A program made the translations under genes and the position numbers. This document shows, in pieces, positions 17,341-60,729 of a stretch of DNA of 64,000 bases. The stretch covers positions 19,716,001 to 19,780,000 of the forward strand of contig CATNEN010000001.1 in assembly GCA_950097015.1 (NCBI GenBank), in the 5' to 3' direction. Source of the stretch: Macrostomum hystrix (Eukaryota; Animalia; Platyhelminthes). Numbering within the stretch: position 1 is the stretch's first letter; each line of letters begins with the position of its first letter. The notes below the pieces were generated by a model. It saw only the letters and a program-made list of their open reading frames with translations, did no database searches and had not been told where the DNA came from.

Positions 17341-17432
17341 AGCTTTAAAAAGCTGTAAATTCAGCTGCTAAAAAGTATATACTAGACGAATTTAAAGTAT
17401 TTCTGCTCCCCGAAGTTGGCAAAACTTGCTAG

Positions 17433-19031: not shown

Positions 19032-20488
19032 TCGTAAGTGAAACCTTGCTCTGATCGCGGGCATTGAGATATTTATTTTTTGTCAATAATGAAGCGCTGT
19101 AATTCAGCCATATTTGGCGCATTTAATTTTTCGTTCATTGTGCTATTTTTCAACCATTTTTATGCGCAACTCGCTTCCTTTGCTACAGCTCAATCTTCAT
19201 CAGTGCCGCATTAAACAGCGACTCAGAGTTGTGGTTTTCACTCTCTATATATTCTCTTAATTTCGCTTTCAAATAATCAAACAAATAAAGTTTTCCATGG
19301 CCTACATCTTTTTTTAAAGTTTTTGTTGTTTAAAGTTGAAAGCATATTCAAATCAAGTTCGGCTTTGCGTTTTCAACGAATTTTTCGTCCTATACAACTT
19401 CTGGGTAGTAAACTACTAGCGTACAAGTAGTCGTTAACATGGAATGTGCTGCAAAATTATGAATTTGTTCTAATATTTCTTTTTTATTGACACTCGTAAA
19501 ATTAAGTGCATGAAGAAGGTACTGAATGTGCACATTTTTTACTATAGTACTGAATGATGCAGTGAAGTATGAAGTTGATAAATCTGACGCGTCATTTTTA
19601 GGGGTCTCAGTTTGACATTCATAGAACTGACACAGTAAGTGAAATCTTCTATGGAAATCTAACGCGTCATTCCTCACGCAGTACTAAACTTGAAGTTTTA
19701 ATTTAGTAGAAAAATGACGCATCGTTGTCTAGCACGTTAAAGTATTTAGTACTTCGCACTGAAAGTTGAAGTACTGTACATACTCGTAGTACAGTATTCT
19801 ATTCTTCCGCACCCACATGTAGTAACTTGCATATAGTTTCAGTATTAGTATTAGGTAAGTAAATTAGTATTAGTATTACTATATTCATAGCATTATCGAC
19901 GTTATCGTACATTTCTCCAAATTGGACATCAGATTAAACTGCTCGGTAGTGCACTGCATATGTTGTTTTCTAGCTTCTGTAAGTGATAAATTTTTAAATA
20001 CCGAATCGTGTACCGAAGTTACCCATCATCGTGTGTATATTTCCATTAATATTTATTGTTCAACAGACAGGACTCTGTATCAGAATCTATATACAACCAA
20101 GTTTCTGTGCATTGGTTTAAAAGTGAAATGCAAGTGCTGACAAACTCCGCTATAAAATGGTTAGGGTTAGGGTTACGGTTTGCGGAATTTACAATTTTGT
20201 GTCGCTACCATAAGACTACACTAGCGTCATTTTAGCGTCATTTTTCAGTACTTTCTGAGAATTATCGCTACGTCAGAATTCCACTTCTGCGTCATTCACC
20301 TACCCCGACGTGTGTTCGGGTGTTTATAATCTTTGGTCTAGCCTAGCCTCAACTAGCCTAGATTTTTCTCCCAAGTTAAGATTAGGTTTAGTGCATACCG
20401 ATTTTAAGATCAAGATGAAACTACCCAGTCTGGACTAGCAAGTCTCGGCTAGGCTTTCTGCATACGGGCCAACAAAGCGCACTTCTTG

Positions 20489-32812: not shown

Positions 32813-35800
32813 TTAAATTTTCGATTTACGGCTCTTAAAGATTTTCGAGGTAGCGGCGTGCGAGATGAGTGAGCTGTAGAACTTCTTTTCCATTCTGATT
32901 TTCGAGCCTGATTGAGAAGGCGATTCTTTGAAACATTTTTGAAGCTCTCGATTTTTACTACCAGTTGATGATGTTGTGGCAACTCTTTTGGCGTAAGCCG
33001 ACCTGTTTTGAATGATTCGGTCATTTTTTCCGATAACTCGCTTGGTATTCCGAGACACTTGTGTCTTTGTGATGTGGCTCTCGTCTGTGATCAGGCCGCA
33101 CCCCCTGATCGTCTGGCTTTTGGCATCTTTTTGCCTCTTTTTGCCTCTTCCGATTACTTTCACTGGAACTTGAAACAACTTCCTCCCTCCTCCTCGTGCT
33201 GTGGGTGACAAATGAAAACATAAAGCAATACCGGATGCAGGAGAGTGATCGAATATAAGCAAGAAAGGTGAACTAACGACGACATACTTTAGAACACTTG
33301 AAATATTCCCGCTTATCAATCATATTCTAATAGTACTCACCGTGTGCAAACCGCTGTTGTCTAGTGCTAATCCAGGCCGCTCTCTGTTCCTCTATCGTCT
33401 CCATGGCAACAAGTCGTCCGAAGTCTGCTGCAGTCCACCAGAGTCTGGCCCGTGTCCACAACTTCCGCTCCTCGTTCTCTGCACTGGGGTGAATGCCGCT
33501 GTCACTGCCCCTTCGATTTGACACTCTCCACAGCTTCTCTCTGACCCAGCGGATCTTCTCAAAGTCCTGCGTCTCCATGGCGACGCGTCTCTCGTCTCTG
33601 AGTATCACCATCTGCCGCAAGCTGAACTCAACATGTTCGCGGCGGTCGCTGTAGTGAGCCAGAGTGAGCAGCTCCTCCAAGTCCGGGTCCTCTTGCAGCT
33701 CTGAGAGCCACGCATCGAAGTCGATTGCTGTGCGATTGCGGAGCAGCTCAGCTTGGAGACTCCAGCTCAGACAGCGGAAGTTCACGTACAGGTGAGAAGA
33801 TCGAGGCTGTGACAGTCTGGCTGTGAGCAGAGTCTGAGTGAACTCAGGAAGGAATGTGAATCGAGGCGGAGTGTCGTGGGGGAAGCAGAACCTCCAGGCC
33901 CAGTCAGCACCCGTATTTAGAATCTCAAGAGTGCCATGTGTGCTACGAAAATCATGGGGTAGAAAAGCTCGCTGTACGTGATGGTTTTGCAGCTGCAGCA
34001 ACAGTTTTTCAGCATCCAGAGTTTCTTTACACTTCAGTTGCACCATGACGTTCAAGCATAGGTTTGCACAACGGCACCAATTTAGATCGCTAAGCATGCT
34101 GAGCAGATTGACGAAGCAGTCTCGACGGCTTGATTCCGACTGCAGTTCAGTCAGAGTCTGGCATATAGCAGTGTATCCTAGGCAGAATTTAAGCTCTATC
34201 TTTTGAGGCTGCTTACTGATGAACTCGGCGGAAGGTACCACTTTCAGCGGCAACAAGGTGAACGGGTGGTAATAGAAGCTCTCAAGCTGTAGAGGTCGAA
34301 GCCATCTGCTGATTTCTGTTTTGACTTTGCTTATATGACTCCTGAGGTCGCTCAGCCGGTGTTGAATGATAGACTTTGTGTTGTCAAAGTCGCCTCCGAT
34401 TCCAGCGTTCTTAAAGTAGATTGATGCATCACGCATAAAAAAGTGAGGCATGCACTCATCTGGCGATTCGCTTGAGTCCATGAATCCAAGCATCAAATCT
34501 ATAGACTCCTTCAAAAGTTTTTTCAAATTTTGAGGTTGCCATTCTTCGTTGTTGAAAGTTCCGTGCTTTTCAAGCATGAAAAATAAAAGGGTTTTTGCGT
34601 GGTAACTTTTCAGTCCCGGAGCTCTAAGCTCAAGTGGCAAATGTCGCTTAAAAATAAACTTTATTATAGTGAACAGTTGACCTTGAACTGTACTCAAAGA
34701 CTTCATGATGTGCTTCTCATGGAAGCTGAAACTGACTCTTAGCTCGTTTGAGCAATTCGGCCTGGTCGCTCTCACAAGATGAACCTTGGTGTCTTGATAG
34801 CTGCAAAGCTTCTCAACTCTGTCATGACAAAATGGGCTGCAGCATGGGATAGCACGGCAGATGTCGAATGCTGGTCTTATACCGCAAGCTGCTGTCGTCA
34901 CTGTGGGCTGATTTCCTGAAATGGTAACCAGTGCTGCACATTAAACATAACTCTGCAGCCATCAAAATAAAACAAAAACAAATCAAGAAACATACCGGAT
35001 CCTACCGCCACCTGGGCATGTCCGTTCGTGACGCGCAACTTTGAAGCTCCTCTGCAGTTGCACGAACCATCTAGATGAAACTCCTGACCATCAGTCAGCA
35101 CAGTCCAGTCGATGTCCGAGTCAGCCGCTGTCCTACCATTCACTTGCATCAGACTGTTGGCCCAGCCATCTGAGTAGCTGCCTGTCATTTGCATGTCACT
35201 GTTAGTGAGCGATCGAGCGATGCCCTCCAATAAAAAGGCCATTTTCTGCTGACAGCGCGCCCTCTCCTGCGTGAAACCAGCCTCACAAAGAAGTTGGTAC
35301 AACTCTTCGCTGAGCTGCCTGTCCTCTTGAATGTTGTCTTGAAACCTAAGTTTGTTAGATTTAGAGTAATTGTATTGCAGTAATTATAACTTTCGACTTC
35401 TCAATGAGATAGAATAAATTTGATGTTTTTTGAGCTAGAAAGCTTAATTTCACATTGCTCATTGAGAAATTTTTGGTATGCGGCGGCCCACCCCAGTCCA
35501 TGGACTGAACAGTAGCTGCACTCAGCATTGTGGTTTTACAAATTTCTAGAATATCAGTTGAATAGCGTGCATACCTTTCAACTCCGGACGAAACAGCAAC
35601 GTCTTCTGCGCTGATTTTTCTCTCTCTAAGATTCAGATGCAGGAGATGCGTGAGTTCAGGTTATGCTGATCGGTTCATTTATTTATGAAGCAAGCATTAA
35701 AATAAGTGTGTGCAGCAGCAAAAATAGTGAAAATGAAGAGCGAAACAGATCTTACCGCTCATTCAGCATTCGCAGCATCTGCGAGTGTCCAGCTTGCTCG

Positions 35801-38766
35801 GCCAGCTGCGAAAGCGTCAGACCCCGACTGTCCCGATGACTCGCATCCGCTCCTCCGTCCATCAGAGTCTTGGCTGCTCGCAAGTGACCACCTTCACACG
35901 CTCGTGACAGAGCAGTCCGACCCTGACTGTCTTCAGCTCGCACTGACGCTCCAAGATCCAACAGTTTGTCGATGAGCTCGTGATGACCTGCATCAGCTGC
36001 CAGCATGAGAGCAGTGGCTCCAGTGCCGTCTGGCAGATCGACATGTTCTCTGCTGAATCGCTCATCATTCATTAGTGTGAGAGCCAGTGCGACATAGCCA
36101 TGAGAGATGGAGACACAGAGCAGCTGTGTGAGCTGAGCTGGCTGCATTCGAGACAGAGTCTGTGTGAGAACGGAGTTCCTGCCCTCGATGGCCATCGAGG
36201 CGGTGAAGTTGAGGACTTGGCTGGACTGGAAGAGCCAGTCGGGTTCTAGGCCAAGGAAGACGACAATGTCTTCTTGAAGACTTGAGCATGCCGCAATTGC
36301 ACATTCTCGACGGAAATCGATTCTAAGACGTCTTTTTGACAGAGACCTCAGGAGGTCTAACTGACCAGCTTTTGCTGCCGACTTCGCAGCCTCAAAGTAG
36401 CACTGATCTCTCATACTACTATCATCGACTATCTCTACGAGAAATTTCACGATATCCCACAGACCAGCACTTGTGGCCGCTTTTACTGCCTCCAAGCAAC
36501 TCCGATCTCTTATAGAACTATCACAAATAGACTGGAAAAGGTACTTCATCAGCTGCTGATTTCTTACAGCTTCAAGCACCGCCTTCATGCAGCACTGATC
36601 TCTCACCCTCTGTTCAGCTATTGTCTGCACCAGAAATTTCACAATATCTTGCCTGCTCTGAATAACTGCAGCTATTGCTGCTTCCATGCAGCACTGATCT
36701 CTCACACATTGGTTGCCAACTGCCTGCACCAGAAGCTTTAGCATTTCAAAGTTGCCTTCAATTACAGCCGCTTTTGCTGGCTCGATGCAGCTTTGGTCTC
36801 GTAAATTGGGATCACCAATTGAGAAAATAAAAAACTTCACAAAGTCCCATTTCCCCGCGAGTGCTGCGAATTTCGAGGCATCTTTGCAGCACTGGTTCCG
36901 CAATGTTTGGTCAGTGATTGATTGTATCAGATGCCGAATCACGTCAACCTGCCCAACCGACGCAGCTCCTGCAGCGTCAATGGCTGCCTCCACGCAACAC
37001 TTATTTCGAACAGCTTGATCAACAAATGTCGACACCAGATATTTTATAACTTCAATTTGACCCGCCAGTGCAGCGGATTTCGTTGCAACAAAACAACAGT
37101 CATCTTTTGACTTCAAGTCATCTATGCAGTTCACTAAAAACCTCATCTCTTCTAGTTGGCCTCTTGTAGCAACGTAATTGGCAGTCTTTATACAGCACTG
37201 CTCTTTTATGTCAGCAAAGTCGATTAGTTGAATGATTTCCACAAGAGATGCTCTTTCATTAAACTCGGCAGCCGATAGAGCGATCTCCATGCAGCACTGA
37301 GCCTTCGAAGTTGGGTCAGAAACCTCCTGCAATAAGAGCTTAGCAGCTTCCCACTGCCGTTCGGAAGCTGCGAAAATCGATGTTTGAATGCAGCACTGCT
37401 CTCTCAGTCGTTCGTCATAGATGCATTGAATTAGGTCCTCCAGAAGCTGACATTTTCCAAACCTTCCAGCAGACCACGCGGCCTTCATGCAGCATTCGTC
37501 CTTCACTTTTTGATCCTGGGCAGATTTGACAAGAAAGTCAATCGCATTCCAATGCCCCTCTGAGGCAGCTGCGTTTGTGGACTGGACCAAGCAGTTTTCT
37601 ATTAGTTTCGGATCAGTTATCTTTCCAATCAGTGTCTCAAGAACTCTTAGGTGGCCAAGCTTTGCTGCGGCCTTTGACCCCTCGGCACAGCATTTTTCCA
37701 TCAGCTTCTGGAGTGAAATCTTTGAAAGCAGAATTTCTAAAATGTAGCTTTCTTGACATTGTGTGCCGGCAGTCTGGTCATTCAGGCAGCACTGAAACTG
37801 CACACTTCCATCCACGACTATTTGGTTAAAAAGACGAATAACTTCTCGGCTGCTAAACTCAAGTGCAGTGTTTATCATGACTTCGCAAATGGCTTCTTGT
37901 TTTATTTTACTTTCGGTAAAGTGCAGCAGAAAATTTGCTACATCCCATTCACAACAGGCAGCCGAGAATCTCACTGACTGCAGGCAACATTCATCTCTTG
38001 CACGTTGATCCGCGACAACCTTCAGCAGAAATTTCAAAATGTCCCACTGACGCTTTTCAGCCGCGACCTTTGCTGCTTCCACACCGCAGAGATCTTTGAC
38101 TTTCCCGTCTGGAATCGACAGCAACAAAAATTCCAACGCTTTCCTTGAGCTGAATTGATGCCCGATTTCGGCTTCGGGTACAGTCATGCAGAAGTCGTCC
38201 TCCACCGCATCTTTATCTGAGCTTATTGGCAGCTTTACAATGGATAATCTGGTGTACTTCGAGTTGAATGGCTGTCCATCAGCTCCTTGCTTGCGATTGG
38301 CATCCAATTCAACTGCTGACTTGGCGAGAAATACCGAAATATTCCACTGACGAAATTTAGCTGAAGTGTTTGCTATTTCCCTGAATAAATCATCGACGTG
38401 CTCCTCTTCAACTTCCAGCATCATTTGCTGAACAACATTCAGCTGGCCGAACCGGGCAGCCGATTTCGCCGCCAAGAAACACAGCTGGCGTCTCATTGTT
38501 GGATCCGCCAGTGTCTGTAACAAACTATTTAAATTTGAAACGCGACCAACTTTCGCAGCAGATACTGACGCTTGAGCATAAGCTTGATACTCAATACCAT
38601 CCTTGCTCAACATGAGCTTTAATGATTTCGCAGAACACCAGGCTGCAATCATTTTAATCGATTTCTTACGTTTTAAAGCCAGTTGAAATCGAAACCAAAC
38701 TCGTGATTTTCTCTGATGGTCAGTTGTTTCTTCTCGCAGGTCCCTAGAATCCATCAAGGAATCCAT
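32813..38766 (-). CDS. ANK-cGLR gene A: ~20 divergent 33-aa ankyrin-like repeats + 3-4 canonical ankyrin repeats + Mab-21/cGAS-like nucleotidyltransferase + C-terminal domain + basic tail, ~1790 aa; exons 38766-35756, 35625-35575, 35345-34996, 34915-33341, 33198-32813
   Basis: GSYSDG..DSDID motif, third acidic residue in FDICRAI, Mab-21 motifs HLV..ELRVSFSFHEK, LKSYHAKTLLF, MPHFF; all junctions GT-AG and in frame (5373 nt). Confidence 0.88.
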
Positions 38767-39057
38767 TGGTTAGTGTGCTCAACTGGTCAGAAATCTGAAA
38801 CTGTATGGCGTTTTGATATGTGTAATAATCATTATAATTGTATTTCTAGCCATTTTAGACATGAAATTGTGAAACTCTTGCCTGTTTAGCCCCATTTAAA
38901 GTATTAAAGTCTTTCAATAGCATGGATCTGAATAAGTCACCAGGCGGTCAAATGGGTACCAGTATTAGCTGGGGTTGAACTAAGTGCAGTTGTGGCCCCA
39001 CCACCTGTCCACAGACTAAACAGCTGTACACAGCCTGTGAAAGCATTGCACAATAGC

Positions 39058-39451
39058 TGCGGATAGCTCAGTCAGTAAGGTGTCGGACTCTGGATCAGAT
39101 GGTCCTGGGTTCGACTCCCGACCTAGTCTAGAACTATTCGTGCAGCCTTTGGCAAGCTGCTTTGCCCTGATGTGCACAGTCTACTCAGCTGCAAATGAGT
39201 ACCGACATTTCGTCGGGTACTAATAATTCCGGCTGGCGTGGAATAAAGCAGTTCTGTGCGGCAATTCTGTGGGGTTTGGATGCTGCCGACATGTATCGAA
39301 AAAATAAATTCCATTCCATTGCTGACACGCAGCTCTCAAACGGTGTCCGAGAGAGCCGGGGATTACATTAGGTGTATAGACCCCACCTGATAGTGCGCTT
39401 GACACACGACACCTGCACTGGCCCTTGGGTCTGGTGTCAATTATTATTATT
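39058..39451 (+). mobile_element. tRNA-derived SINE family B (CORE-like), full length
   Basis: A box TAGCTCAGTCAG, B box GGTTCGACTCC, CORE-like GTGCAGCCTTTGGCAAGCTGCTT, (ATT)n tail, TSD AATAGCTGCGG. Confidence 0.85.
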
Positions 39452-40075
39452 AATAGCTGCGGCTGTGCCACTGTCTGTAAATATGGCCCAACTAAGACTA
39501 TATGTCATTGAGGAACGAAAGAGGTAGTGAAAAGCTTACCGTTTAAAAAGATCAATACAGCCATTTTGCAAATTTTGTTTGGTAAAATGATATATTTTTA
39601 ACTAGAAAAATATTAGTACCTTGTAACGAAGTTTTGCTGCAGCCTTTATAAGAAAGCTTTTATGTACATCCATGTAAGTGTACGTATATCTACGATCAAT
39701 ACGTACATAAGTACTCTTGTTATAAGGTACTAACTAATAAGGTACTTCTAGACATCTAGACTCAGTGTACATCTTCTCGAAGCATGTCCTGCTCATGTTC
39801 TGCTAATTGCGATCCCAACTATGCTGAATCTTACCTTGCCTATGAGATTTTGAGTTCATTTGGTTATCTTTGCCTACCTCAGAGCACATCTTATCACTAT
39901 TCCTTTTTATAGAAATGTTTGTTTATTTGAACTGCCCGACCAACTCACCTGTACACCTTATCAATGGCTTCACTAATGAAAAAATATTCATTATTATAAT
40001 TGCCTAATTGCAGCTGATAGCGGTCGAACTCGATCAATCCAGAGTGTTATTTTTTATTAAAAAGCATAACTTTTT

Positions 40076-40142
40076 TCCAGTGAAGTCAAGAATCGAACCC
40101 CTGACCTTCAAGTTGTGAGCCAATGCTCTAACCACTTTGCCC
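40076..40142 (-). mobile_element. tRNA-like SINE head or tRNA pseudogene fragment
   Basis: Reverse complement GGCAAAGTGGTTAGAGC...GGTTCGATTC has A and B boxes but no intact acceptor stem. Confidence 0.5.
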
Positions 40143-41181
40143 TACTTAAAGGATTAAAAATGTCTTGTTGTTTTTAACACCAACTTGAATTCATGAGAAA
40201 TATTTTATCGTAAGCAATGGCAGTCAAATAAAAATTATCAAAGAAACTATATTATATGCTTTACTATTATTATTTTAACTTCTAAATAAATTTGATAGTT
40301 ATAACGCCTTTTTAATGCAGCAGATACTTCTATGAGTAGTATTTGGCACTTTAATCCCAAGTCTAAGCAAAGCAATAAGTTTTCAATGGACTATTTTATC
40401 AACTGTTTTCAATAGTTTAAAAATATTTCCATGTTTTAATCGTCCATTTTTAATAATAGTTTAAGGAACCATTTTAGCCGAGTCAATATTTTCCAACCAA
40501 AATTCCAAATGTCTTCCTATTCTCCAATTTGCTCAATAATTCTGATCCCTCCTTCACACCGTGATCAGCTTTGTTTGTCTCCACAATTTCAACTCTGTCA
40601 CCAACGGGGACACAGTGACGGCGTGTCTCAAGCGGCGGCTGAGTAAGAGAGTACACCCGCTGTCTTATTTCACTTTCTCTCCCAAAATTTTACTTTTAAC
40701 AAAATATGTTCCGCACAAGGGGATCAGGGGAACGGAGTGGAGGGAGGGGAGAAATGAGAGGGAGAGTGCAGAGCTGCTGTTCCACTTCAATTGTCTCTCC
40801 TTGCCTGCCATTGGCCAGAACTTGGTGGCATGGAGAGGACTAACATTGTGTACTGTCCTCCGGCCACCACCCCAAACACACCGCCTCACCTCAGGCTCAC
40901 AGAATGTTTAAGGAACAAACTACCTGGTCGTCGAGACGGAGAGAAGGAGAGAACAATTTTGCAAGCCCAATATTTCACCTGAAGATAGAAGGGCTCCGCC
41001 CGTTCAATTAATCATACAGGGCCAGTTGCGTAACTCCGTTTTAAGATTCTCTTGAATTTAGCATGAAATCTGATAGCCATGCAAATAGATCGACTCCATA
41101 CCTTCTTGAGACCAGCCGCATCTTTATTTAGATTACAGTCTTTATTCTTTTTTTGAAAGAAAATTGGTGAAAATAGTCGAC

Positions 41182-50100: not shown

Positions 50101-53100
50101 GAGACTGAGGCTGTCAGAAGCTAGCTCAACCGTGGAGGAGCAGGCGGAGTCACTAGCTGCTCTCGAAGTGCTGGGAGAACTGCAGCTGGCGAGATGCACT
50201 GAGTCCACCGAGACCGAGGCTGATGAAGCGGAGAGGCAGTTCAACCGTCAGCTGCAGCTTGTGAACAAGCTCGCTGACTGGGAGTCGACGTCGGCAGCTT
50301 TAGGGAGAATCGGTAGGCGCACAGATGTCTTACATCTCAGACTATGAAAATGACATTTTGACAATGCTGAACTCCTTGAAGCTCAGCATGAAGTTAAATT
50401 GTTATCCCTGATAACCCGAAATATCTTTCCCTGAGGCTTTGATGACACCACACTGAAGCTCTGAAAAAGTCTGTCTTTTTGAACAATCGTTCGCACTACC
50501 AATCTAACAAGCCTGCAAATTCTTCCATGGAAACCAGAGACGTTTTTTTTCAACTTTCAACAATACGCATTATTGGAAATAAAGCTGATGGGCGCATAAC
50601 GACAGCCCAAACCATACTCCTCTTCAGGTCACCTCCTACTAAAAGTCACGTCTTTGCCCCCCCAAAAGTGCGCCGTCCACTTCCCACCCCCTTGCGGATT
50701 TCTAATCACCAAGCATCGCCATTCCGCTACGCTTTCTTCCATGTCTTCTTTTGTCGGTCTCGGTTTCTGGCTAATGGACGCCATGTGTTCCGTGGCCCGG
50801 CGAATCTCCTTCAGATCCCCGGGTTCTCCTAACCACTCATTTAGGAAGCGGTGGACGGCAACACAAAGGAAAAGACGAAATAGAAAATGAATGGGACGCG
50901 AATCGAGGGGCGACAGTAAAAAACACGTCGCCCATCGTTTCCTCCCCTTCGAGTACGGTGGAAAACATCTAGTGTAGAGGTTTCGTTTATCTTCTTCATT
51001 CTTTTCTTTCTGTGCCGCAGTCCGCCAGTTTCTGTTTAATGCGCTTTTCGAAAGCTGGAATGCATCCACTATGATGCTTTCAGACAAAAAAGATAAAATT
51101 CTAGATAGAAAATCTAATAACAATTCTTTCCTAAAATTATCCCGTGAAAGCTCTATTCTGTAGCCGTGTACACTGGAAGACATCTGCGCAATTACAAAAG
51201 ATTCTATATTCTTTCCAAGCATCGAACCATTATCGTAGTTTTAGAAATAACACAAATGGTACTCGTACTAAAACCAAAAAAACTAAATTTTAAACCCAGG
51301 TCGTAGCCATGCCGCCCGAGGCAATTACAAGACAGCGTTTCGTTGGCATGTCGAGCGACTTGCACAGCTGCAAAATTCGCCAGCTGGTGACCGACGTGAT
51401 CGGCAAATGGACGCTTGTCTGATGAACCTAGTCGACGCTTGCCGTCAGCTCAAACGCTGGTCGGAAGCTCTTGGCTACGCGCGACAGCGAGTGCAGCTGA
51501 CGGATCGCGCTGGTCGCATTGACTCGCTGGACCAGTTGGCCGACATTCTTTGGCGCTACGGAAGAAACAGACGCGAACAAGCAGCGTCCGTTACAGTGGC
51601 TTACAAAGAGCTTTTATCGGCTCTGTCTGATAGTGAGCGTTGCTATGGTGACCACGAAGCCAACCAGAGGAAGAGGCGAAGAGCTTTTCGTCGATTAGCG
51701 AGTATTCAACTTCGCTGGGGTCTGGCCAGAGATGCAGAGACAGGCTTCAGAGAGTCGCTCTCAGTCGCTGCGGGTGCAGCAACGGCACTGGAGATTTCAA
51801 AGGCAGAGCGCGGACTCGCCGGGTCACTGCTGCTACAGAATCGATTTCCGGAAGCAGAGTCAGCGATCGCACACAGTCTTTGTGTCTGCAGCGATTCAGA
51901 AACCAACTTGAAGATTTGCTGCGCAAAGGCAAAGTCAAAAGCACTGTCGGGTCACGCAGCGATTCGAGAACGTCTCGGCGATTATCCCGGAGGTCTGCGT
52001 CATAGACAAGCGGCACTAGAAGCGGCTCGACGTGTCCGATCTGCGAAGCTTCTGAGGAGTGCCCTAGGAGACTTGGGCGACGCCAACCTGGCTCTGGGGA
52101 ATTTGGCCTCCTGCCTGCGATGTCATCACGAAGCAGTGGAGATGGCAGAGGCGTCCGATGTGGAAGCGCTTAGTCGCCTGGCCGGAGCTCTTGTATCCTC
52201 CAGAAGATGGTCGGAAGCTGTTGAACAGCTTGAAAGGCTAAAAAAACTGCTTGAATGTGTTCAGGAGAATGACAATGAGAGTCCAGAATGCAATCTAGCT
52301 AATGTGTTGCGTGCCTTAGGCGACTGTTATCACAGGTTGCGGAAACCGAAGCAAGCAATTCGATACTACAGACGCTGCTTAGAGAGCCTGGCTGATGCAG
52401 AGACTAAGCCTCCCACTCCCAAACCTTGGACGGCACCTGAATACTCTGGTATTGAGTTGTTCAAACTATCCGGGAACTCAACAAAATGTTCTTGTCCAAC
52501 ATGTGATAAGCATCGTGCACAAAAACTTTCAGAGCATGAAACAACACCAAACAGTGAGCGCGAAACGGAGTCCAAAATAGAGCAGAAATTGGTTATATCA
52601 GGAAAACAAGAAAACTGGCTTTGTCGAGCTATTATTCTCAACCAGCTGGCAGTGTGTCATCGTCGATGTAGACAAATTCGTGAAGGCCAGCAATGCGCTG
52701 AGAAGTGTCTCGCTTTGGCGACAAATCTCAGGACGAGCGATGCTGCACCGATCGTCACTGACGCTATCATAGCAGACACCTACGAAACGATGGGTCGCTT
52801 ATTACTGCTCAAGCTGCAGCTGACGAAATCAACGATTGAGATCGACGGCGACGTAATTCAGAGAGCCGGAGACTGTTTCGCCGCCCAGCTGACTGCCGCG
52901 CGTCGAGTCGGATGCCGAGCGCGTGAAGCATCGGCTGCGCACTGGTTGGGCCGAGCGCGACAACTTGCCGGCCGCAGGGCCGAAGCGGCCGCTTGGCATC
53001 GGGCAGCGCTGGCAACCGCCCCGTCGCAGTATGGACGAGAACGAGCTCTCGCGGCACTTGCTGCGAATCTACGCGAAGCTGGAGACGCTGCGACCGTCTT

Positions 53101-55159
53101 GGAGACGCTGGACGATACGAAAGACACCTTGGAAGTTGACGTTCAACATAATGATGACATAGCGATCGCTTCGAAAACTTCAAGTAGCTGGCAATTCCTT
53201 CGTCAACATCAACGAGGATTGGCTTTAGAACGACTCGGTCGTCTTGAGGAGGCTCGGAACGCGTTGATGGTTGCAACTGTAAAGCAGGTTGAAATGCTGG
53301 AGAGAAACGATCTTGATGATGAATGCGAAGTTGATGAGGAAGAGAACTGCGAGGCGTTAGGCGAATGTCTAGACGGGCTGCAACGGATACTCTGGAGTCT
53401 TGGCAACTGGCGACAAGCTCTTAACTTTGCTGAGCGCCGGCTGCTTTTGTTGCTAGGCAACGAGTTTGATGGCTCGAAGTTCGATAGACTCAGCAATGCA
53501 GATCCTGTTGAGGCACTGCAATCCGACCTGGGCGATTGTGAGGCCGTGCTCTGCTTAACACAAGCAGGCGAAGGAAAACTCTTCAGCTGGTTGATCACTT
53601 CTTCAAAAAGAGAAGCAGGTGGTCTTGTTGCTAAGGATGCGAAAATCAACTCAAAAAGCTCCGACGATACTGCAGCGATCGTACATGAACTTGTCATGAC
53701 AACACTGCTTTGCGACTCAAGAGAGTGGCTAAAGAAATTGACGATAGTCTCCAGTCGGGACACGATGCTCGCAATGCCTTCAACAACCGGGTTGCTAAAT
53801 GGTCAGATTTCAGTTTCAATGGCGCCCAGCCTTCGGCACTGTCAGTTCTGGCGTACTGGGCTGCGAAGAGTTTCGAAGCCGGATTTAACCGACCCCTCCT
53901 GCCGAGTACTAGCATTCGCGGACGATGATAGCGACGAAACTAGCTTGTCAGCTCTTATTAAACAAGAATGTTTGCAAAACTCGAGGACGACTTGTTGCTG
54001 CCAGCCATTGTCGCAGCTGATCCAGATGGCGCCTCAAGCTAGAGATATTATTCACATCTCGCTAACATTTCCGACAAGCGCATGGGAAATGCAAGACTTG
54101 CAAATTTCAGCGCGGCTTGTGGTAATCTTAGCTAAGCGTTCGCTCGCAGCAGAGCAAGGTAGTGGGTTCAATTCTGACGAACTGAACTTTCTGGTTCAGA
54201 TGGCTGGGGCCCTGATGTTTGCAGGTGCGAGAGCGGTTCTTATCTGTCTGCAGCAAGATATGCTGAGCACTGTGTACTCCAAACTATTGACATATTGTGG
54301 TGACAAGAGCAGCGGACATATTGCCGATGCCGTTCGCTCTGCTCTTGCTGAGCATAGCAACAATAAAAGCATCCCTAGCAACCCATTGATCTTACTTGGC
54401 GACGTCAGAACCCGACTGCGAACCATGTGTGGCTCGCTGGGCTGCATACTTCATCTACTCCTGACGGGACAGCGCGGTGCCGGCAGTGGACCCGTAGAAA
54501 TTCGACGTTCGCTGCGATCGCTCGTGAGATTCTTGGAGGCTGCGCCGTCAGGTGCGGAAGCTCCGCGTGAGAGGCGGCAAAGCTGGTGGACTTGCGAAGA
54601 GATTGAATCAGCAGCTACGCGCATTCGAGCCCTTGCAGCTCTTCCAGACTCTGCTCTGGTTGCATTGCGACGGTTACTCGCTGCAGTCAGCAACGATAGC
54701 GAGGACCTCGAACAGATGGCCAGCCTGCTGAAAGACGCTTCCAGAGTGTCGACATCGACTGCTTGCCTGACAGTCACTCCGAAGCTCTGGCGTCGCGATG
54801 GCTGTCACGATTTTTTAACGGCCGTTGGCTTCCGGCTGTGCAGTCTGGACGCGGCCGACGGCACCGCTCAGCTGATGCTGTTGTCTCTCTCATCTCCGAC
54901 GACATCCACAGCACTTTTAGGCAAGGCATCGCTGAGCTTGGCCACGCTCGCTGATGCTGATCTCACCGACGACTGCGAGTTCTTCGACAGAGTTCAGGGC
55001 CTTGAAGCTGCTAGAGTGAACGAAGACTGCTCTGACGCCGATGCCAGCCTGTTTCGTCGACGTCGCAGATGCCAGCCGCCCGCGGTGGTGCAGTCCACGG
55101 TCAGCTGGGACAGCAGCAGCGGCTACGGCAGTGGCTGGGACTTTCCGGGGTCGCCATGA
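41182..55159 (+). CDS. TTC28: TTC28-like tetratricopeptide repeat protein with a degenerate CHAT domain, ~1817 aa; exons 41182-41619, 45461-45629, 47033-47311, 49605-50312, 51300-55159
   Basis: DPFALTSVIGQELLAAG..LRCSVLASLGRAHWLLG and C-terminal LWRRDGCHDFLTAVGFRL match TTC28 family signatures; many TPRs; CHAT-like LMFAGARAVLICL; in-frame GT-AG splicing (5454 nt); extra exons cannot be excluded. Confidence 0.8.
41752..42045. repeat. (TTCTA)n microsatellite
   Basis: Directly visible. Confidence 0.97.
43190..43910. repeat. CT-rich low-complexity repeat, intronic
   Basis: Directly visible. Confidence 0.95.
44266..45330 (+). mobile_element. partial SINE family A copy split by a solo LTR
   Basis: B box and GAGGCCGCATT before 44300; SINE body resumes CATTTTGGGCGCAGCC after 45186. 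Confidence 0.8.
44300..45182 (-). mobile_element. solo LTR (883 bp, probably Gypsy-type)
   Basis: Termini TGTTGT...ACAACA, 4-bp TSD CATT, CCAAT and TATA-like motifs; orientation inferred. Confidence 0.85.
45640..46930. repeat. ~22-bp minisatellite (AATCCCTTCACAATCCTTCCCG)n, intronic
   Basis: Directly visible. Confidence 0.95.
47360..48655. repeat. 13/17-bp minisatellite (GTCTGTACTGGGT)n, intronic
   Basis: Directly visible; the long Cys/Val ORFs are artefacts. Confidence 0.95.
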
Positions 55160-55832
55160 GCCATTGATGATAATGATGTCTTTTATTTTCGCATGTAGAT
55201 ATTTTTTTCGAAGTTTTTTATGTCTGAAGCATTCTTAATCCACCTGATAGACAGAAAACATGCGCACGTAGTCCTTTTGTCATTTTGTAACCAGCCACAA
55301 CTGACTACTATCCAGTAGTATGTAACAGCTTTCACAGTTTACCCGCTGAACGATCGTTTTTTGCAGCGCTGGAGTATTTTAAACCAAACCTCAATAACTA
55401 GTCACATAAATTGCTCTTCATGTATTTGAAAATTGTAATTGTAATAAATTATTACATTTTCGCACTCAGTCAATTCTGTCCGACATTTAAAGTTTTTTTA
55501 TTTGATTAAAAGGTGCAAATAAAACTGAATATAGTCTTGTGTCAACCAGGACAAAAGTAATGTCAATTTCTTGAACTTTTTTTCGTTTCTTCAAACTAGT
55601 TTTTGGCATGTTTGAGGACTCGTAAATATCTAAAAACCGGTAGTCCTGGAAGCGCCGAATGAGAATAGCAATAACTTCGAACTTATAATAGACAGTCGCA
55701 CACTAAACAAACAACTAAGACAGGTGTGGCAATTGAATCTGAATAAAAGTTTAGAGCCTTGAAAATTATGAATAAAAGTGCTCAGATACGCTCGTTATAG
55801 AGTTGTAACAATAAGGGTGCGCTGAAATTCAT

Positions 55833-58800
55833 TCAAACTTTCCGCTGCACACTGGCAGCTCCACTTAGCAGACTCTGCAGCTGCTCCCTATCCAGACACC
55901 TGTCCACCACACTGTGGTACTTTGACAGCAGGCTCTGGCCCAAGCCCCAGTCAGGGCAATAGTGCAGGCACGCTAGCAACTCCTGTAGATCGGGCTGGTC
56001 GCCCTGCAGGGACTCGGCGGCCCAGTCTCGGCTGAGCTTCCGGCTGAGCTCCGCATCCAGCAGCTCGATGCAGAGGCTGCGCAACAGAGCGTCGAAGTTG
56101 ATGTAGAACTCGTCGCTATTTGTCTCCAGACGTGTCGGAAAGTACTTTTCTATGAAACTGCCTCCGGTTAAAAAGTGAAACTTCGGATCCGAATCGAATT
56201 CAAAGCAGAACTTCCAGGCTGAGTCAGTCTGGGTCAGGTGATTCCAAACAAAATCCTTCGTGGCTTCACGCGCCGATCTGCCTGCAGGCCATTCAATCCA
56301 CCGGCAAGCTGTGCGTCCTCTGTCACTAAACTCAACCAGAGTCTCTGTTGCTGCGACTCGATTGTCGAATTTCAAGCAGCTCAGCGCTCTGAGAGCCTCT
56401 CTCGCGGTGCGGACACAGTCTGGCAAGGTGTTTAGTAGTTCCAACACATCTGATTCTATTGCTTCCTTTTGAGTAAGCAAGCCTAACGCTTCTCTCACAA
56501 CAGAGTAGGCCATCGTATAGTCGCTTTTCGAATGGATCTTTTTAAACAAACCCGATGCCTGAAAAACTGCCGCCTCGTCATTGATGGGGAGAATTTGAAA
56601 CGGGTGAAAATAGAAACTTCCTGATTGTGGAAGAACCGAAAGGCTGTCTTTAAACTTCATAAGATTTTCTGGCAGATGATAAATGACATCAGTCAACACT
56701 AAGGCGATTTCTCTAGCCGTGCTTTTATCTGCACCCTTCAGATATAGACCGGCGTCTTTGAGGAAGAAGTGCTCCATAACTCGACCGTCAAGATTCTCAT
56801 TTGAACAGCCTCTTTCCACGCAGTCAAGAAGCATCTGCAGCGATCTTCGAGTGAGACTCAAGAGACTCTGCGGTTGCCATTGCTCGCATGGAGTCTCTTC
56901 CAACATCCGGAAGGTTACAGTCTTGGCGTGGTACGCCTTGAGGCCCTGCACCCTGCGACCGATGACCTTCTTAACCAGAAATTTCAGCAGGATGAACATC
57001 TGGCCCTGGACAGTGTTGAGACTCCGTAGCAAACGTCTCTCCAGGAAGGTGGTGCTCACCCTCAGCTGCTTGCCAGCCTGTCCAGGGGGCGCCGCGTGCA
57101 CCAGGTGACACGGCGAGGCCGCTAATTCCAGCCGAAGTGACTGCAGCACAGACTGGGGAATGTTGGACCTGGCCAGCCGACTAGGCTGCAGCGGCGCGAT
57201 GGGAGGGTAGCAACAGAGCCGGCAGGCGCTCACTCGGTCCACGGCCGGTTTCAAAGCGGAGCCTCGCCATGGCCTGGCCGGGTTCGAAGCTAAATAGGTG
57301 CGAAATAAACTCTTGAATTATTCTTAGTTAACACTGACGGGGGTCAGTGGCAGAGCGGTTAACGCGGTAGCCTATGGCCCCCAATTTCCTAAGCTCGATT
57401 CCGCGGCGAGGCCACATTCATTTTGGGCGCAGCCGCAGAAAGAAGGCTTGGGGGCTTGTCGTGCAATTTACGCCCTTGAGGACCAACCTCCAAGGCACAG
57501 TAAAGTGAACACTGCCTGACGATGAGAAAGTCAGGGCAGATGTACACACCAGTGTGAGTCTGTGCTTGCGTACAGCAGTCAGCGGAACGGGCAGAATTGC
57601 CTCCTCGCTGGCAGCGGGTCTAGTGTCAACAAATGATATACCATGGCCCGCAGCCCTCCTGTAAATATTATTATAGCTGGATATTTCATGATTATTATAC
57701 TCGTATTTAACGTTGCTAATACATTTTCTGAATCTTATACCCGCAAGCCGTGCTGACTTACCAAATCCTGCACAGAGAATGTGACCGTTGGTGTACTCGC
57801 ATCGGTTCATAGTCTCGCCTTCTGTCTCAGAGCAATCGCAGAAATCTTTCAGGTGATACAGCCGGCCCGTAATCAGCTCCATCACGTCAATGTCTGATTC
57901 AGAGTCGGTTCTCCCGTCCAAGCTCGTCAAGCTGTTGCCCCAGCCCTCGGAGAAGCTGCCAACAACAAATATCTGTTGGCTGGTGTACCGGGACGTGATC
58001 TGCTCGAGCACATCGGCAGCTGCGCTCTGCAGTGCCGCTCGAGACTCGGTGAAGCCAGATTGAGTCAGGCACTGGTTCAGGAGCAGGCTCGCCTCGTTGC
58101 TCGGTGTTCTAAATCAGTTTGAAAAGTGCAAAGATAGTAAACATTACTGACTTACTCCGTAAAATATCCCACTGATGCCGGAAAAGATACTAATAATACG
58201 AGTATTTGCAGGAGGGCTGGGGGCAGTGGCACATCATTTGGTGACACAAGGCCCGCTGCCAGCGAGGAGGCAATTCTGCCCGTTCCGCTGACTCCTGAGA
58301 ATACATGCACGCGCTCACTCGGGTGTGCATGCCTGCCATGACTTTCTCATCGTCAGGCAGTTTCACTCCCACTGTGCCTTGTAGATTGGTCCTCAATGGC
58401 TTAAATTGCACGACAAGCGAGAGGGTGCGAGAGGCCAACGCGATAACTGCTCTGCCACCGACCCCCTTACAAGCTTGTACAAGATTTTTCAAGCGGGACA
58501 ATCAACTTACTCCGGAAAATAATCCACTTGCGCCGGAAACGTCGGTTCAATTTTCGACTCGGAGATTTTTAAGCAGTCCTGCTGTACCAAAGAAGCGCTC
58601 AGGATGAACTCATCCGAAGACTGCGCCCTCGCCAGCAGTGCTGCTGTGAACAGATCACAGTTCAGACAAGCAGCTTGCAGGCAGACCGACTCGATTTCCA
58701 CCTGGGCCGCAATCAGAGCTTGCACAACCTTGTGATGACCTTGACTTGTTGCTATTAGCAACGGAGAAATGCGAGGCCATCGCACAGCGCTCAAATCGGC

Positions 58801-60729
58801 CTGAGCTGCTATGAGCAGATGGACAACAATCTCGTGACCATTCTGCGCTGCTGAGAACACCGGCGATGCACCATTGGCAGCTCGAATGTCCAAGTCAGCC
58901 CCGGCTGCGGAGAGCGACCTCACAACTCTCACGTGACCGTACTGGGATGCAACGTGAACAGCCGTGTAACCATCGCGCTGCTGAGTGTCCAGACTGGCAC
59001 CAAACTTGATCAAGTTGTCAACAATGGGCGAATGACCATTCTGCGCAGCTATCCACAGAGCTGAGGTACCATCGCTGGCCAATAATTCCGTGCTGGCCCC
59101 AGCAGACAGGAGTCGGTCCACAACATTCGTGTGACCTTTCTGTGAAGCTGCGTACAGCGGAGAGCATCCGGCGTAATTTGCCAGGTCCACGTCGATTACG
59201 GTCGCAGCTAATAATTCTTCGACCGCTTCACAATGTCCTTCCTGTGAAGCCAGATACAGAGCCGTGCAGCCATTGCTCACTTGAAGATTCACATTGGCCT
59301 GAGCGGCGCTCAACAGCAGCCGGACAATGCGGGTATGGCCCAGCTGGCTGGAAATGTGAATCGGCGCTGCTAGCTGCACATGGCCTGTCAAGTCAGCATC
59401 GGCATTGGCAGCGATCAGGGCTAAAGCGATCTCCCAGTGGCCCTCCTGCGCTGCAGCGTACAGTGCGGTTGTGCCGTGCCTGTTAACTTGGTTAACATCT
59501 ACCTGAGCCCTAATTAGTCGGTGGACAATCTGGACATGGTTGCACTGCACTGCTATTTGGAGCGGCAGGGCTTCATTCTTATCGGAGTCGGGGTTTGGTT
59601 TCGCACCGGCCTCAAGTAGATAGTCAACAATGCTTAAGTGGCCATAACCAGAGGCTGCATAGAGAGGAGCTAACCTGCATGGGTTTGAGTCAGCTTTAGC
59701 TTTGAGCAGTGTCTGCACGACCAGATTATGTCCGTTTTGCGCAGCGATCAACAGAGGCGTGCTGCCATTTTGCATGGCTTGATCAACGTCGGCCATCCGT
59801 CCGACCAGATCTCGCACCACAGCTAGGTGGCCATCCTGAGATGCGACATAGACTGGCGTTGCTCCATCGGTCTCTGGTAGGTTTAAGTCAGGAACACCAA
59901 ACTGCAGCAGCTGCCTGACAATCTGGACTCGTCCGAACTGCGAGGCAATGAACAGCGGCGTGGCGCCCTGTATCTGGCGCAGATTGACGTCGACTCCTGC
60001 CCGAGTGAGAACCTCGACAACTTCTAGATGGCCTTCCTGAGCGGCTGCGTACACCGGAGTTCTGCCCCGATCCTGCTGCTGATTGGCATCAGCCTGGGCT
60101 TTGAGTAGTACCGACACAGCCTGCCTGTGTCCCTTCTGTGCCGCAATATACATGGGGGTGCAGCCGTCAGTTTTGCGAAAGTCCACATCAGCCATGGCTT
60201 CAGCCAGCAGGGTCACAATGCCCCAGTGTCCATTCTGAGCGGCCATATAAATTGGCGTTGAACCAACGCTGGTTCGAGCTCGGTTTACGTCCGCCTGGCA
60301 ACTAATGAGCAGGCGTGTCACAGCCGCGTGACCATTTTGAGCGGCGGCCCAGAGCGGAGTGCAGCCGAGCCGCTGGGGCTGGTCCACATCGGCGCCCAGT
60401 TGGACCAGCCGCCTCACCAGCTGCTCATGTCCGTAGGCCGATGCTACAAAAAGTGGCGACTCGCCGTGACTCGATATGCGATTAACGCCGGCAGATGATA
60501 ACTTGGACGATTGAACAAGCTGTTCTAGAGCAGCCAGTTGTCCATTGATGCAGGCCAAGTGAAGCGGCGACAGGTGGCTCCCGTTAAAGTCGAACATGTC
60601 ATCAGCGGATTCGCCCCCGCTCAGACACGCCTTCAAACTGGCTGAGTCGCCGGCTAAAACTGCTCGCAGAAATTCAGCGCTTGGAGATTGCTTAGCCGGC
60701 ACAGATGCGCGCTGCGCTGGCACAGTCAT
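55833..60729 (-). CDS. ANK-cGLR gene B: ~19-21 canonical ankyrin repeats + Mab-21/cGAS-like nucleotidyltransferase + C-terminal domain, ~1340 aa; exons 60729-58511, 58108-57762, 57289-55833
   Basis: TPLxxAAxxGH repeats; GSFSEG..ESDID motif, third acidic residue in VDRVSAC, HLV..QLRVSTTFLER, LKAYHAKT, MEHFF; GT-AG junctions in frame (4023 nt). Confidence 0.88.
57337..57672 (+). mobile_element. SINE family A in intron 2 of ANK-cGLR gene B
   Basis: Full-length match to the family. Confidence 0.88.
58192..58467 (-). mobile_element. SINE family A with an internal deletion, in intron 1 of ANK-cGLR gene B
   Basis: Reverse-complement match; lacks the B-box region. Confidence 0.85.

What the first reader, a model, noticed from the sequence alone, without database searches (positions are those of the whole stretch)
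32813..60729. Modular ankyrin-repeat/cGAS-like receptor family: exchangeable repeat sensor exon on a conserved nucleotidyltransferase core
Seen: two paralogous genes (32813-38766 and 55833-60729) each have one giant first coding exon (3.0 kb and 2.2 kb) of ankyrin-type repeats that ends at a phase-2 intron just before the first NTase helix (LSEELYQLLCEAGFTQERA vs ASLLLNQCLTQSGFTESRA). They share a phase-1 intron at the same site inside the NTase (after NGHAQVAVGS / NGHILCAGF), the same Mab-21 motifs and the same C-terminal domain. The repeat arrays are very different in type. Established: Mab-21/cGLR enzymes (cGAS, Drosophila cGLR1/2, bacterial CD-NTases) make cyclic dinucleotide messengers, and the well-studied cGLRs sense nucleic acid with the catalytic domain itself. 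Inference: this is an NLR-like architecture in which a variable repeat solenoid senses a ligand or guarded protein and gates a second-messenger synthase, diversified by exon shuffling at the phase-2 intron.
Basis: partly seen in the sequence, partly recalled or inferred. Interest (0 to 1): 0.9.

Follow-up and report, generated by a model that had tools for sequence, protein, structure and literature searches.

The report
Flatworm ankyrin-fused cGAS-like receptor genes
Two flatworm genes each join a long ankyrin-repeat array to an apparently intact cGAS-like signalling enzyme; they belong to a family of about 140 such genes in this genome, but the design was already catalogued in 2023 and I found no sign that the repeat exon is swapped between genes.

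Summary
Gene A (32813-38766, minus strand) is one spliced transcript of 1790 codons. Transcript-type contigs from four runs of one study join the ankyrin exon to the enzyme exons. Gene B (55833-60729) has the same plan by sequence only.

Both genes keep the GS...DxD...D catalytic motif and a Mab-21_C domain. A 53-59% identical Macrostomum lignano relative folds like cGAS. The genome matches the M. hystrix assembly (220 Mb, 42 contigs) and holds about 140 enzyme N-lobe exons, most with ankyrin sequence just upstream.

- Ankyrin-cGLR fusions were catalogued by Li et al. 2023, who cloned five M. lignano members of this family without their ankyrin part. None is named among their 15 selected active enzymes.
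- Exon shuffling is not supported. Repeat type follows the enzyme tree (one change), and sequences on either side of the phase-2 intron diverge together (Spearman 0.84, control 0.88).
- Gene A's odd repeats are diverged ankyrin repeats with a 33-residue period.
- Ligand sensing by the array, and any enzyme product, remain untested.

Verdict: new members of a known kind, of moderate interest.

The parts
35756..38766 (-). Gene A exon 1 (3011 nt, ATG at 38766, ends in phase 2): the ankyrin-type array
   Evidence: ORF. The donor at 35755 is used in spliced contigs. A stop lies 2 codons upstream of the ATG.
36307..38589 (-). Gene A: about 20 diverged 33-residue repeats with a [QE]CC signature in place of the ankyrin TPLH motif
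   Evidence: Autocorrelation peaks at period 33. Repeat register shown. In-register BLASTP alignment to gene B's ankyrin array, E 9e-9. No DNA-level tandem repeat.
35830..36102 (-). Gene A: three canonical ankyrin repeats next to the enzyme. This is the most conserved stretch compared among paralogues.
   Evidence: Pfam Ank_2 4e-35, residues 889-979. Mean 83% identity among 17 paralogues.
35575..35625 (-). Gene A micro-exon (51 nt, in frame, phase 2 on both sides), a linker between the ankyrin exon and the enzyme exon
   Evidence: Joints 35625>35756 and 35343>35573 (cut +2) in one contig in each of 4 runs. GT..AG on both flanking introns.
34996..35345 (-). Gene A exon 3: enzyme N-lobe (spine helix; GS at 35177-35182; DxD at 35108-35116). 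Ends in phase 1.
   Evidence: G55, S56, D77 and D79 are invariant in 12 of 12 aligned paralogues.
33341..34915 (-). Gene A exon 4: third catalytic Asp (34863-34865), Mab-21_C (34428-34643) and a C-terminal helical domain (33342-34277)
   Evidence: Pfam PF20266, 34.5 bits. Spliced joints. AF2 model of the C-domain has pLDDT 85.5. Only generic TPR-like matches, Z up to 8.5, and no Foldseek hit at E<=0.001.
32813..33198 (-). Gene A exon 5: basic, low-complexity tail (127 residues, net charge about +26), stop at 32813-32815
   Evidence: Joint 33198>33341 in 4 runs. Charge. No match in the other 29 paralogue loci within the flanks held, about 1.5 kb each side of the exon-4 match.
58511..60729 (-). 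Gene B exon 1 (2219 nt, ends in phase 2): about 20 canonical ankyrin repeats
   Evidence: Pfam Ank_2 9e-109, Ank 15 stretches. Sequence.
57762..58108 (-). Gene B exon 2: enzyme N-lobe (GS at 57955-57960; DxD at 57886-57894). Ends in phase 1.
   Evidence: Splice sites are inferred from sequence and frame only.
55833..57289 (-). Gene B exon 3: third Asp (57237-57239), Mab-21_C (56709-56963) and C-terminal helical domain (55836-56615)
   Evidence: Pfam PF20266, 24.2 bits against a cut-off of 24.1. 35% identity to gene A exon 4.
58109..58510 (-). Gene B intron 1 (402 nt, GT..AG). It holds a SINE-like insertion flanked by a 24-nt direct repeat that duplicates the donor.
57290..57761 (-). Gene B intron 2 (472 nt, GT..AG, phase 1). 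It holds an inverted copy of the same element.

Best explanation
These are two diverged paralogues of a Macrostomum-specific expansion of ankyrin-fused cGAS-like receptors (ANK-cGLRs). Each protein has four parts: a long N-terminal ankyrin solenoid, a cGAS/Mab-21-type nucleotidyltransferase with an intact active site, the Mab-21 C-lobe, and a family-specific helical C-terminal domain of about 250-300 residues.

Most likely mechanism (inferred): the enzyme is held inactive until the ankyrin solenoid, possibly together with the C-terminal helical domain, binds a protein or other non-nucleic-acid partner. It then makes a nucleotide second messenger that is read by a downstream receptor. A weak STING-like candidate exists in the genome.

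The family diversified by tandem gene duplication and by growth, shrinkage and divergence of the repeat arrays. It did not diversify by exchange of the repeat exon between genes.

Shown here: the gene structure, the transcript for gene A, conservation of the motifs, the fold of a homologue, the family size, and the congruence of repeat type with enzyme clade. Inferred: enzyme activity, the product, sensing by the ankyrin array, and any immune role.
For: - Spliced contigs link the ankyrin exon to the enzyme exons of gene A in 4 runs of one study. The spliced frame is open for 1790 codons.
- GS...DxD...D is intact in genes A and B. In the gene A-type loci the third Asp is intact in all 30, and GS...DxD is intact in the 29 whose N-lobe exon lies within the flank held. 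GS...DxD is intact in 28 of 29 gene B-type loci.
- The AF2 model of the M. lignano homologue P0004 has pLDDT 88.8. Its best PDB matches are cGAS chains, with probability 1.0 and target-normalised TM 0.5-0.57.
- Mab-21_C is present in both genes.
- Li et al. 2023 classify M. lignano members as cGLRs and list ANK-cGLR as an architecture.
- The genome holds 142 N-lobe exon matches. Ankyrin sequence lies on the same strand, within the ~1.5 kb of upstream flank held, in 23 of 29 gene B-type loci, and the ankyrin tail lies upstream in most gene A-type loci.
- The enzyme core is near neutral: +0.5 and +2.4 net charge. [quoted passage not shown]
- The five ankyrin-less M. lignano constructs have an empty 'active cGLR' column in Li et al.'s Table S3.
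- Repeat type needs one change on the enzyme tree. The two sides of the phase-2 intron co-diverge.
Against: - No enzyme assay exists for any member with its ankyrin part.
- The fold was predicted for a homologue, not for the window's own spliced protein.
- Gene B has no transcript evidence.
- PF03281 (the Mab-21 NTase model) did not hit the exon pieces at E<0.01, and the N-lobe profile found nothing in the PDB by sequence.
- STING_LBD is found only once in the genome and below Pfam's cut-off (25 against 27 bits).
- The sequencing runs are not labelled as RNA. That they are transcript-derived is inferred from the spliced joints and the total contig size.
- The congruence test uses coarse classes and automatic M. 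lignano gene models. Full arrays of the other loci in this genome could not be fetched.
Confidence: 0.6

Rival explanations
1. The enzyme domain senses the ligand itself, as in cGAS and Drosophila cGLR1 (double-stranded nucleic acid). The ankyrin array only localises, scaffolds or auto-inhibits the protein.
For: All characterised cGLRs bind ligand on the catalytic domain (Li et al. 2023). The three ankyrin repeats next to the enzyme are the most conserved stretch compared (83% identity), which suits a structural or regulatory role. Gene A ends in a very basic tail of about +26 charge that could bind nucleic acid.
Against: The enzyme cores are near neutral. The ankyrin-less M. lignano constructs, tested with poly I:C and dsDNA, are not among the 15 named active enzymes. 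The basic tail was not found in the other paralogue loci, within the flanks held.
Confidence: 0.2
2. One reading: the repeat exon is an exchangeable cassette, moved between genes by exon shuffling at the phase-2 intron.
For: The phase-2 boundary is conserved. The same phase recurs at the junction from the C-domain to the ankyrin exon in the caspase-linked subclade, so the exons are phase-compatible. Genes A and B carry very different arrays.
Against: Repeat type maps to the enzyme tree with one change. Exon-1 tail and exon 4 co-diverge as closely as two enzyme exons do (0.84 against 0.88). The two array types are homologous ankyrin repeats (E 9e-9), so divergence from a common fused ancestor is enough to explain them.
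Confidence: 0.07
3. The proteins are not nucleotide-signalling enzymes. The Mab-21 domain would act as a scaffold or pseudo-enzyme, as proposed for Mab21L1/2, in a non-immune process such as reproduction or development.
For: Some branches of the family have lost catalytic residues: the caspase-linked loci read N-I-D with Ser at the third position, and M. lignano P0011 reads G-I-D. No product is known. MAB21L1 is also among the fold matches (rank 36).
Against: Genes A and B and nearly all of their closest paralogues keep every catalytic residue despite 35-65% overall identity. That argues for selection on catalysis.
Confidence: 0.13

Closest known systems
Ankyrin-fused cGLRs catalogued by Li et al. 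2023 (bioRxiv 10.1101/2023.02.22.529553 / PMC9980059), including Stylophora pistillata ANK-cGLRs and M. lignano cGLRs #89-93
   Same: Same domain order (ankyrin array, then cGLR enzyme). M. lignano #92 and #93 are gene A-type and #89-91 are gene B-type relatives by their motifs. #93 is P0115, 85% identical to P0001.
   Different: The paper treats the fusions as a catalogue entry and expressed the enzymes without the ankyrin part. It does not describe the exon plan, the Cys-Cys repeat variant, the C-terminal helical domain or the family size in a second Macrostomum species.
Human cGAS and Drosophila cGLR1/2
   Same: Bilobal cGAS-like fold in the homologue model. GS...[DE]x[DE]...[DE] active site. 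Mab-21 C-lobe.
   Different: About 12-14% identity. There is a longer insert between GS and DxD. The core is near neutral rather than basic. The flatworm proteins add a 740-1000-residue ankyrin array and a 250-300-residue helical C-domain. The ligand is unknown.
Fungal and animal NLR/STAND receptors with ANK, TPR or WD sensor arrays
   Same: A repeat solenoid is joined to a signalling module, in a large and tandemly expanded family with variable repeat number.
   Different: No NACHT or NB-ARC ATPase domain was found. The signalling module is a nucleotidyltransferase. This is a resemblance in logic only.
Macrostomum ANK-cGLR-ANK-caspase genes (M. lignano P0006, P0010, P0146; this genome at C1:3.09-3.12 Mb)
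   Same: Same enzyme family and same C-domain. They branch inside the gene A side of the tree.
   Different: They carry a C-terminal ankyrin plus caspase extension and have lost catalytic residues. Genes A and B have neither feature.

Membership tests
cGLR / Mab-21 (cGAS-like) nucleotidyltransferases | cGAS-like bilobal Pol-beta NTase fold | tested here: met
   AF2 model of M. lignano P0004 (53% identical to gene A exon 4): pLDDT 88.8. Top Foldseek PDB matches are cGAS chains with probability 1.0; MAB21L1 is at rank 36. The test was done on the homologue, not on the joined window protein.
cGLR / Mab-21 (cGAS-like) nucleotidyltransferases | Active-site motif G[GS] ... [DE]x[DE] ... [DE] on the expected strands | tested here: met
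   Gene A: GS, D-I-D and the Asp in PAFDIC. Gene B: GS, D-I-D and the Asp in PAVDRV. GS and DxD are invariant in 12 of 12 aligned paralogues. In the model they sit at beta1, beta2 and a later strand.
cGLR / Mab-21 (cGAS-like) nucleotidyltransferases | Mab-21 C-lobe (Pfam PF20266) | tested here: met
   Gene A 34.5 bits and gene B 24.2 bits, against a cut-off of 24.1. Gene B is borderline.
cGLR / Mab-21 (cGAS-like) nucleotidyltransferases | Sequence match to the Mab-21 NTase model (PF03281) or to solved cGAS/MAB21 chains | tested here: inconclusive
   No PF03281 hit at E<0.01 on exon pieces. phmmer and profile searches of the PDB found no NTase. Only single exons were searched, never the joined domain.
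cGLR / Mab-21 (cGAS-like) nucleotidyltransferases | Ligand-dependent synthesis of a cyclic nucleotide messenger | not testable with these tools
   Needs biochemistry. The five ankyrin-less M. lignano relatives are not named as active in Li et al.'s Table S3.
Ankyrin repeat proteins | 33-residue helix-turn-helix repeats matching the Pfam Ank models | tested here: met
   Gene B: Ank 4.9e-106 with 15 stretches. Gene A: last three repeats, Ank_2 4e-35. Gene A's Cys-Cys repeats have period 33 and align in register with gene B's array (E 9e-9), but Pfam does not call them.
NLR / STAND receptors | Central NACHT or NB-ARC P-loop NTPase | tested here: not met
   No such Pfam family in any exon piece of either gene. 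The genes are therefore not members. The comparison is one of design logic only.

The most novel reading that the evidence does not exclude
The ankyrin solenoid is the true ligand or guardee sensor that switches on the cGLR enzyme. The ~140-gene family would then be an inherited recognition repertoire built on a second-messenger synthase rather than on an NLR ATPase, in a phylum where most members are reported to lack cGLRs. A sister branch has replaced messenger synthesis with a directly fused caspase.
Probability: 0.3. Interest if true: 0.75.

Novelty: new member of a known kind. Interest (0 to 1): 0.42.

Why it matters
Every cGLR whose ligand is known senses nucleic acid with the catalytic domain, and many animal cGLRs are orphans. 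If the ankyrin array is the sensor, this family would show a second way to switch on a cGAS-like enzyme. It would also offer a tractable flatworm system for finding non-nucleic-acid ligands: M. lignano is a laboratory model. For the scan, the main result is a correction. The architecture is real and expressed, but it is already catalogued, and the proposed exon-shuffling mechanism is not supported.

Tried and rejected
I used the ±1.5-kb flanks of genome-search loci and M. lignano proteins instead.
- The whole-protein family profile against the PDB was swamped by ankyrin hits. The exon-3 profile and the exon-4 sequence gave no NTase hit.
- Pfam scans of alignment A1 and of ten long proteins were over the size limits.
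- The Atlas search of the C-terminal domain gave only scores below 0.8.
- VIA and Foldseek searches of the C-domain model gave generic TPR-like or helical-repeat matches (Z up to 8.5, Foldseek E at least 0.14). No specific fold is assigned.
- The 1192-codon frame at L030 looked like an extra domain, but it is a low-complexity PSKLRASSVNH repeat.
- The '1302-aa open frame' reported for the caspase locus is not one exon. The Mab-21 exon ends at a GT donor and is joined across a 118-nt intron.
- No DNA-level tandem repeats exist in either ankyrin exon. These two arrays are therefore old and diverged, unlike the homogenised arrays that earlier findings report elsewhere in this genome.
- The joined spliced protein was not sent to any search or fold tool. 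Exons were searched one by one by reference.
Full report
**What is in the sequence**

Both genes lie on the minus strand. Gene A opens with a 3011-nt exon (38766..35756) and gene B with a 2219-nt exon (60729..58511). In each, an in-frame stop lies shortly upstream of the ATG.

Pfam calls gene B's first exon a canonical ankyrin array: Ank_2 E 9e-109, with 15 Ank stretches. In gene A it calls only the last ~100 residues, which are three repeats. The rest of gene A's exon is a repeat with a 33-residue period and a [QE]CC signature where ankyrin repeats have TPLH. It aligns in register with gene B's array over 378 residues at E 9e-9. Both arrays are therefore ankyrin-derived, and gene A's is a diverged variant. 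Neither exon has any DNA-level tandem repeat, so these arrays are old rather than homogenised.

**Gene model of gene A**

Four runs of one study hold 82-83% of the sampled words of the stretch. The runs are not labelled as RNA. Their contigs total only 44-50 Mb against a 220-Mb genome and carry four joints, each with GT..AG on the gene's strand. I take them to be transcript assemblies; this is an inference.

The joints give this model:

| Exon | Coordinates | Length | Note |
|---|---|---|---|
| 1 | 38766..35756 | 3011 nt | ankyrin array, ends in phase 2 |
| micro-exon | 35625..35575 | 51 nt | in frame, phase 2 on both sides |
| 3 | 35345..34996 | 350 nt | enzyme N-lobe |
| 4 | 34915..33341 | 1575 nt | third Asp, Mab-21_C, C-domain |
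| 5 | 33198..32813 | 386 nt | basic tail and stop |

In two of the four runs, the listed pieces of a single contig run from 35851 inside the ankyrin exon, through the enzyme exons, to about 33810 (X2 record 9, X4 record 20). In all four runs one contig carries the joints around the micro-exon.

In a local script I joined the exons only to count frame and length. The result is 5373 nt, 1790 codons, with one terminal stop. The joined protein was not sent to any search or fold tool. All searches were made exon by exon, by reference.

It missed the micro-exon, so two introns rather than one separate the ankyrin and enzyme exons. It also missed the 142-nt 3' intron that removes the apparent stop at 33327.

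**Gene model of gene B**

From sequence alone, exon 1 ends ...CCG GA|GTAAGT (phase 2). Exon 2 is 58108..57762 and ends in phase 1. Exon 3 is 57289..55833. Both introns are GT..AG and the frame stays open, giving 1340 codons.

Three things support the model indirectly:
- the same exon plan recurs in the paralogues;
- 23 of 29 gene B-type loci have ankyrin-coding sequence on the same strand within the ~1.5 kb of upstream flank held;
- M. lignano proteins such as P0032 have the same domain order.

**The enzyme**

Exon 3 of gene A and exon 2 of gene B carry GS and D-I-D. The next exon carries the third Asp, in PAFDIC and PAVDRV respectively. G55, S56, D77 and D79 are invariant in an alignment of 12 paralogues.

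In the gene A-type loci the third Asp is intact in all 30. GS...DxD is intact in the 29 whose N-lobe exon lies within the flank held. GS...DxD is intact in 28 of 29 gene B-type loci. Mab-21_C (PF20266) is found in both genes.

Because the enzyme domain is split by an intron, I folded a public full-length relative instead. This was M. lignano P0004, 709 residues and 53% identical to gene A exon 4, with a 56-row family alignment. The model has pLDDT 88.8 and pTM 0.81. Its best PDB matches are cGAS chains, at probability 1.0 and target-normalised TM 0.5-0.57. MAB21L1 appears at rank 36. In the model, GS follows beta1, DxD lies on beta2 and the third Asp on a later strand. This is the Pol-beta NTase arrangement.

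Sequence-only searches of the PDB, and the PF03281 model, did not reach the exon pieces.

**The C-terminal domain**

Both genes continue after the Mab-21 C-lobe with a conserved domain of 250-300 residues, running from FY[YF]HPF onward. Gene A's copy, folded with 32 rows, gave pLDDT 85.5. It is mostly helical with a small sheet. VIA found only generic TPR-like or helical-repeat matches (Z up to 8.5, within the range the tool calls common for helical proteins). Foldseek found nothing at E<=0.001. I describe it as a family-specific helical domain of unknown role.

Gene A's last exon adds a basic tail of about +26 charge that was not found in the other 29 paralogue loci, within the flanks held.

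**Organism and family size**

All named relatives in public protein collections are from Macrostomum lignano. The assembly has 220,453,370 bases in 42 contigs. This matches the M. hystrix assembly of Wiberg et al. 2023 (PMC10468722), so the organism assignment is an inference.

In the whole genome:
- gene A's exon 4 finds 82 places;
- gene B's last exon finds 91 places;
- the N-lobe exon finds 142 places at E<=1e-5.

Many copies sit in tandem clusters about 11-15 kb apart. Genes A and B are only 35% identical and belong to the two main branches of the family.

**Is the repeat exon exchanged?**

I ran three tests.

- *Repeat type against the enzyme tree.* On a tree of the enzyme core (exon-4 part only; 74 rows: 72 public proteins plus the window's two genes), rows with a gene A-type N-terminus and rows with a canonical ankyrin N-terminus need a single change. 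All 33 gene A-type rows fall in one group of 36.
- *Co-divergence across the intron.* Among 17 gene A-type paralogues in this genome, pairwise identity of the exon-1 tail correlates with that of exon 4 at Spearman 0.84. The control, two enzyme exons against each other, gives 0.88. The pairs are not independent, so only the effect size counts.
- *Homology of the two arrays.* The two repeat types are homologous.

What does vary is array length. Open frames holding gene A-type repeats range from 432 to 1892 codons. This fits an ancestral ANK-cGLR fusion that spread by gene duplication, with arrays growing, shrinking and diverging in place. The tests are coarse, because full arrays of the other loci could not be fetched. 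Local exchange is therefore not excluded, but nothing calls for it.

**What is already known**

Li et al. 2023 report that 87% of about 3,000 animal cGLRs are stand-alone enzymes, while some carry TPR or ankyrin modules. [quoted passage not shown] Their Table S3 lists five M. lignano proteins, #89-93, cloned for the activity screen. The column that names active enzymes is empty for all five, whereas known active enzymes are labelled there. The screen used poly I:C and 45-bp dsDNA.

The architecture and this very family are therefore on record. Their function is not. I found no later paper on ankyrin-cGLR function.

**Mechanism**

I favour ligand or partner binding by the ankyrin solenoid, which would control an otherwise silent cGLR enzyme, with a nucleotide messenger as output. 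The evidence in favour is:
- strict conservation of catalytic residues across diverged paralogues;
- a near-neutral enzyme core of +0.5 and +2.4 net charge, whereas Li et al. link nucleic-acid sensing to basic surfaces;
- the apparent silence of the ankyrin-less constructs.

This remains an inference. The three ankyrin repeats next to the enzyme are the most conserved stretch compared (83% identity). That suggests a fixed coupling module, with the variable part further towards the N-terminus.

A possible receptor exists. A 337-codon frame at C2:9104529-9104996 matches STING_LBD at 25 bits, just under the 27-bit cut-off.

**Side observations**

A sister subclade couples the same enzyme and C-domain to ankyrin repeats and a caspase:
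- Four loci here have a caspase exon 1.8-2 kb downstream on the same strand.
- At L032 the C-domain exon ends at a GT donor and joins an ankyrin exon in frame across 118 nt.
- M. lignano P0006, P0010 and P0146 show the fused protein.
- These copies have lost catalytic residues: N-I-D and Ser here, D-[MI]-N in M. lignano.

Earlier findings of this scan describe the same caspase locus, and homogenised hypervariable ankyrin arrays on other cGLR genes of this genome. I treated them as leads. The caspase adjacency and the broken motif were seen here independently. The hypervariable arrays were not examined, and the window's two arrays are not of that kind.

**Verdict**

The genes are new members of a known kind (ANK-cGLR). 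Exon shuffling is not supported, and sensing by the array is an open hypothesis worth a bench test.

Noticed in passing
G000 C1:3096831-3123438 (L032-L034) and C1:9218952-9222968: A subclade of the same family has a caspase (PF00656) exon 1.8-2 kb downstream on the same strand. At L032 the C-domain exon is joined in frame to an ankyrin exon across a 118-nt GT..AG intron. The enzyme motif is degenerate (N-I-D, with Ser at the third acid). M. lignano P0006 and P0146 show the fused protein with D-[MI]-N; P0010 shows the same fusion, but its motif was not located.
   Followed up: partly
L031 (G000 C2:9103029-9106496), frame 1000-2010 minus: The only STING ligand-binding-domain match in the genome: 25 bits against Pfam's 27-bit cut-off, covering profile positions 3-145 of 182. 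It is a candidate diverged receptor for cGLR products.
   Followed up: partly
window 57339-57674 and 58196-58466; direct repeat 58150-58173 / 58505-58528: Gene B's two introns hold inverted copies (81-92% complementary) of an element with a tRNA-like head, flanking the enzyme N-lobe exon. The copy in intron 1 is bounded by a 24-nt direct repeat that duplicates the exon-1 splice donor. This could affect splicing of exon 2.
   Followed up: partly
window 51407-55159 (+): A 1250-codon single open frame, tail-to-tail with gene B. Pfam finds only TPR repeats (TPR_12, 8e-18) near residues 254-327; the rest is unassigned.
   Followed up: no
window 32813-33198 (-): Gene A's last exon encodes a 127-residue tail with pI 11.3 and about +26 net charge. 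It is supported by spliced contigs but was not found in 29 paralogue loci, within the flanks held.
   Followed up: partly
window 34996-35345 (-), alignment A2: His90, Cys95 and His109 are invariant, and Cys97 nearly invariant, in the N-lobe exon across 12 paralogues. A conserved Cys-Cys follows the third Asp. Together they might form a metal site; this was not tested.
   Followed up: no
L030 (G000 C2:3317917-3322344): One paralogue's last exon runs on into a long low-complexity tandem repeat (PSKLRASSVNH units) within a 1192-codon open frame.
   Followed up: partly
window 20538-22199 (+) and 17392-19122 (-): Unrelated neighbours: an open frame with a C-type lectin domain (1e-18), and one with a whole-protein Rieske-domain match (4e-22) whose only aligned stretch is 25 residues long.
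   Followed up: no
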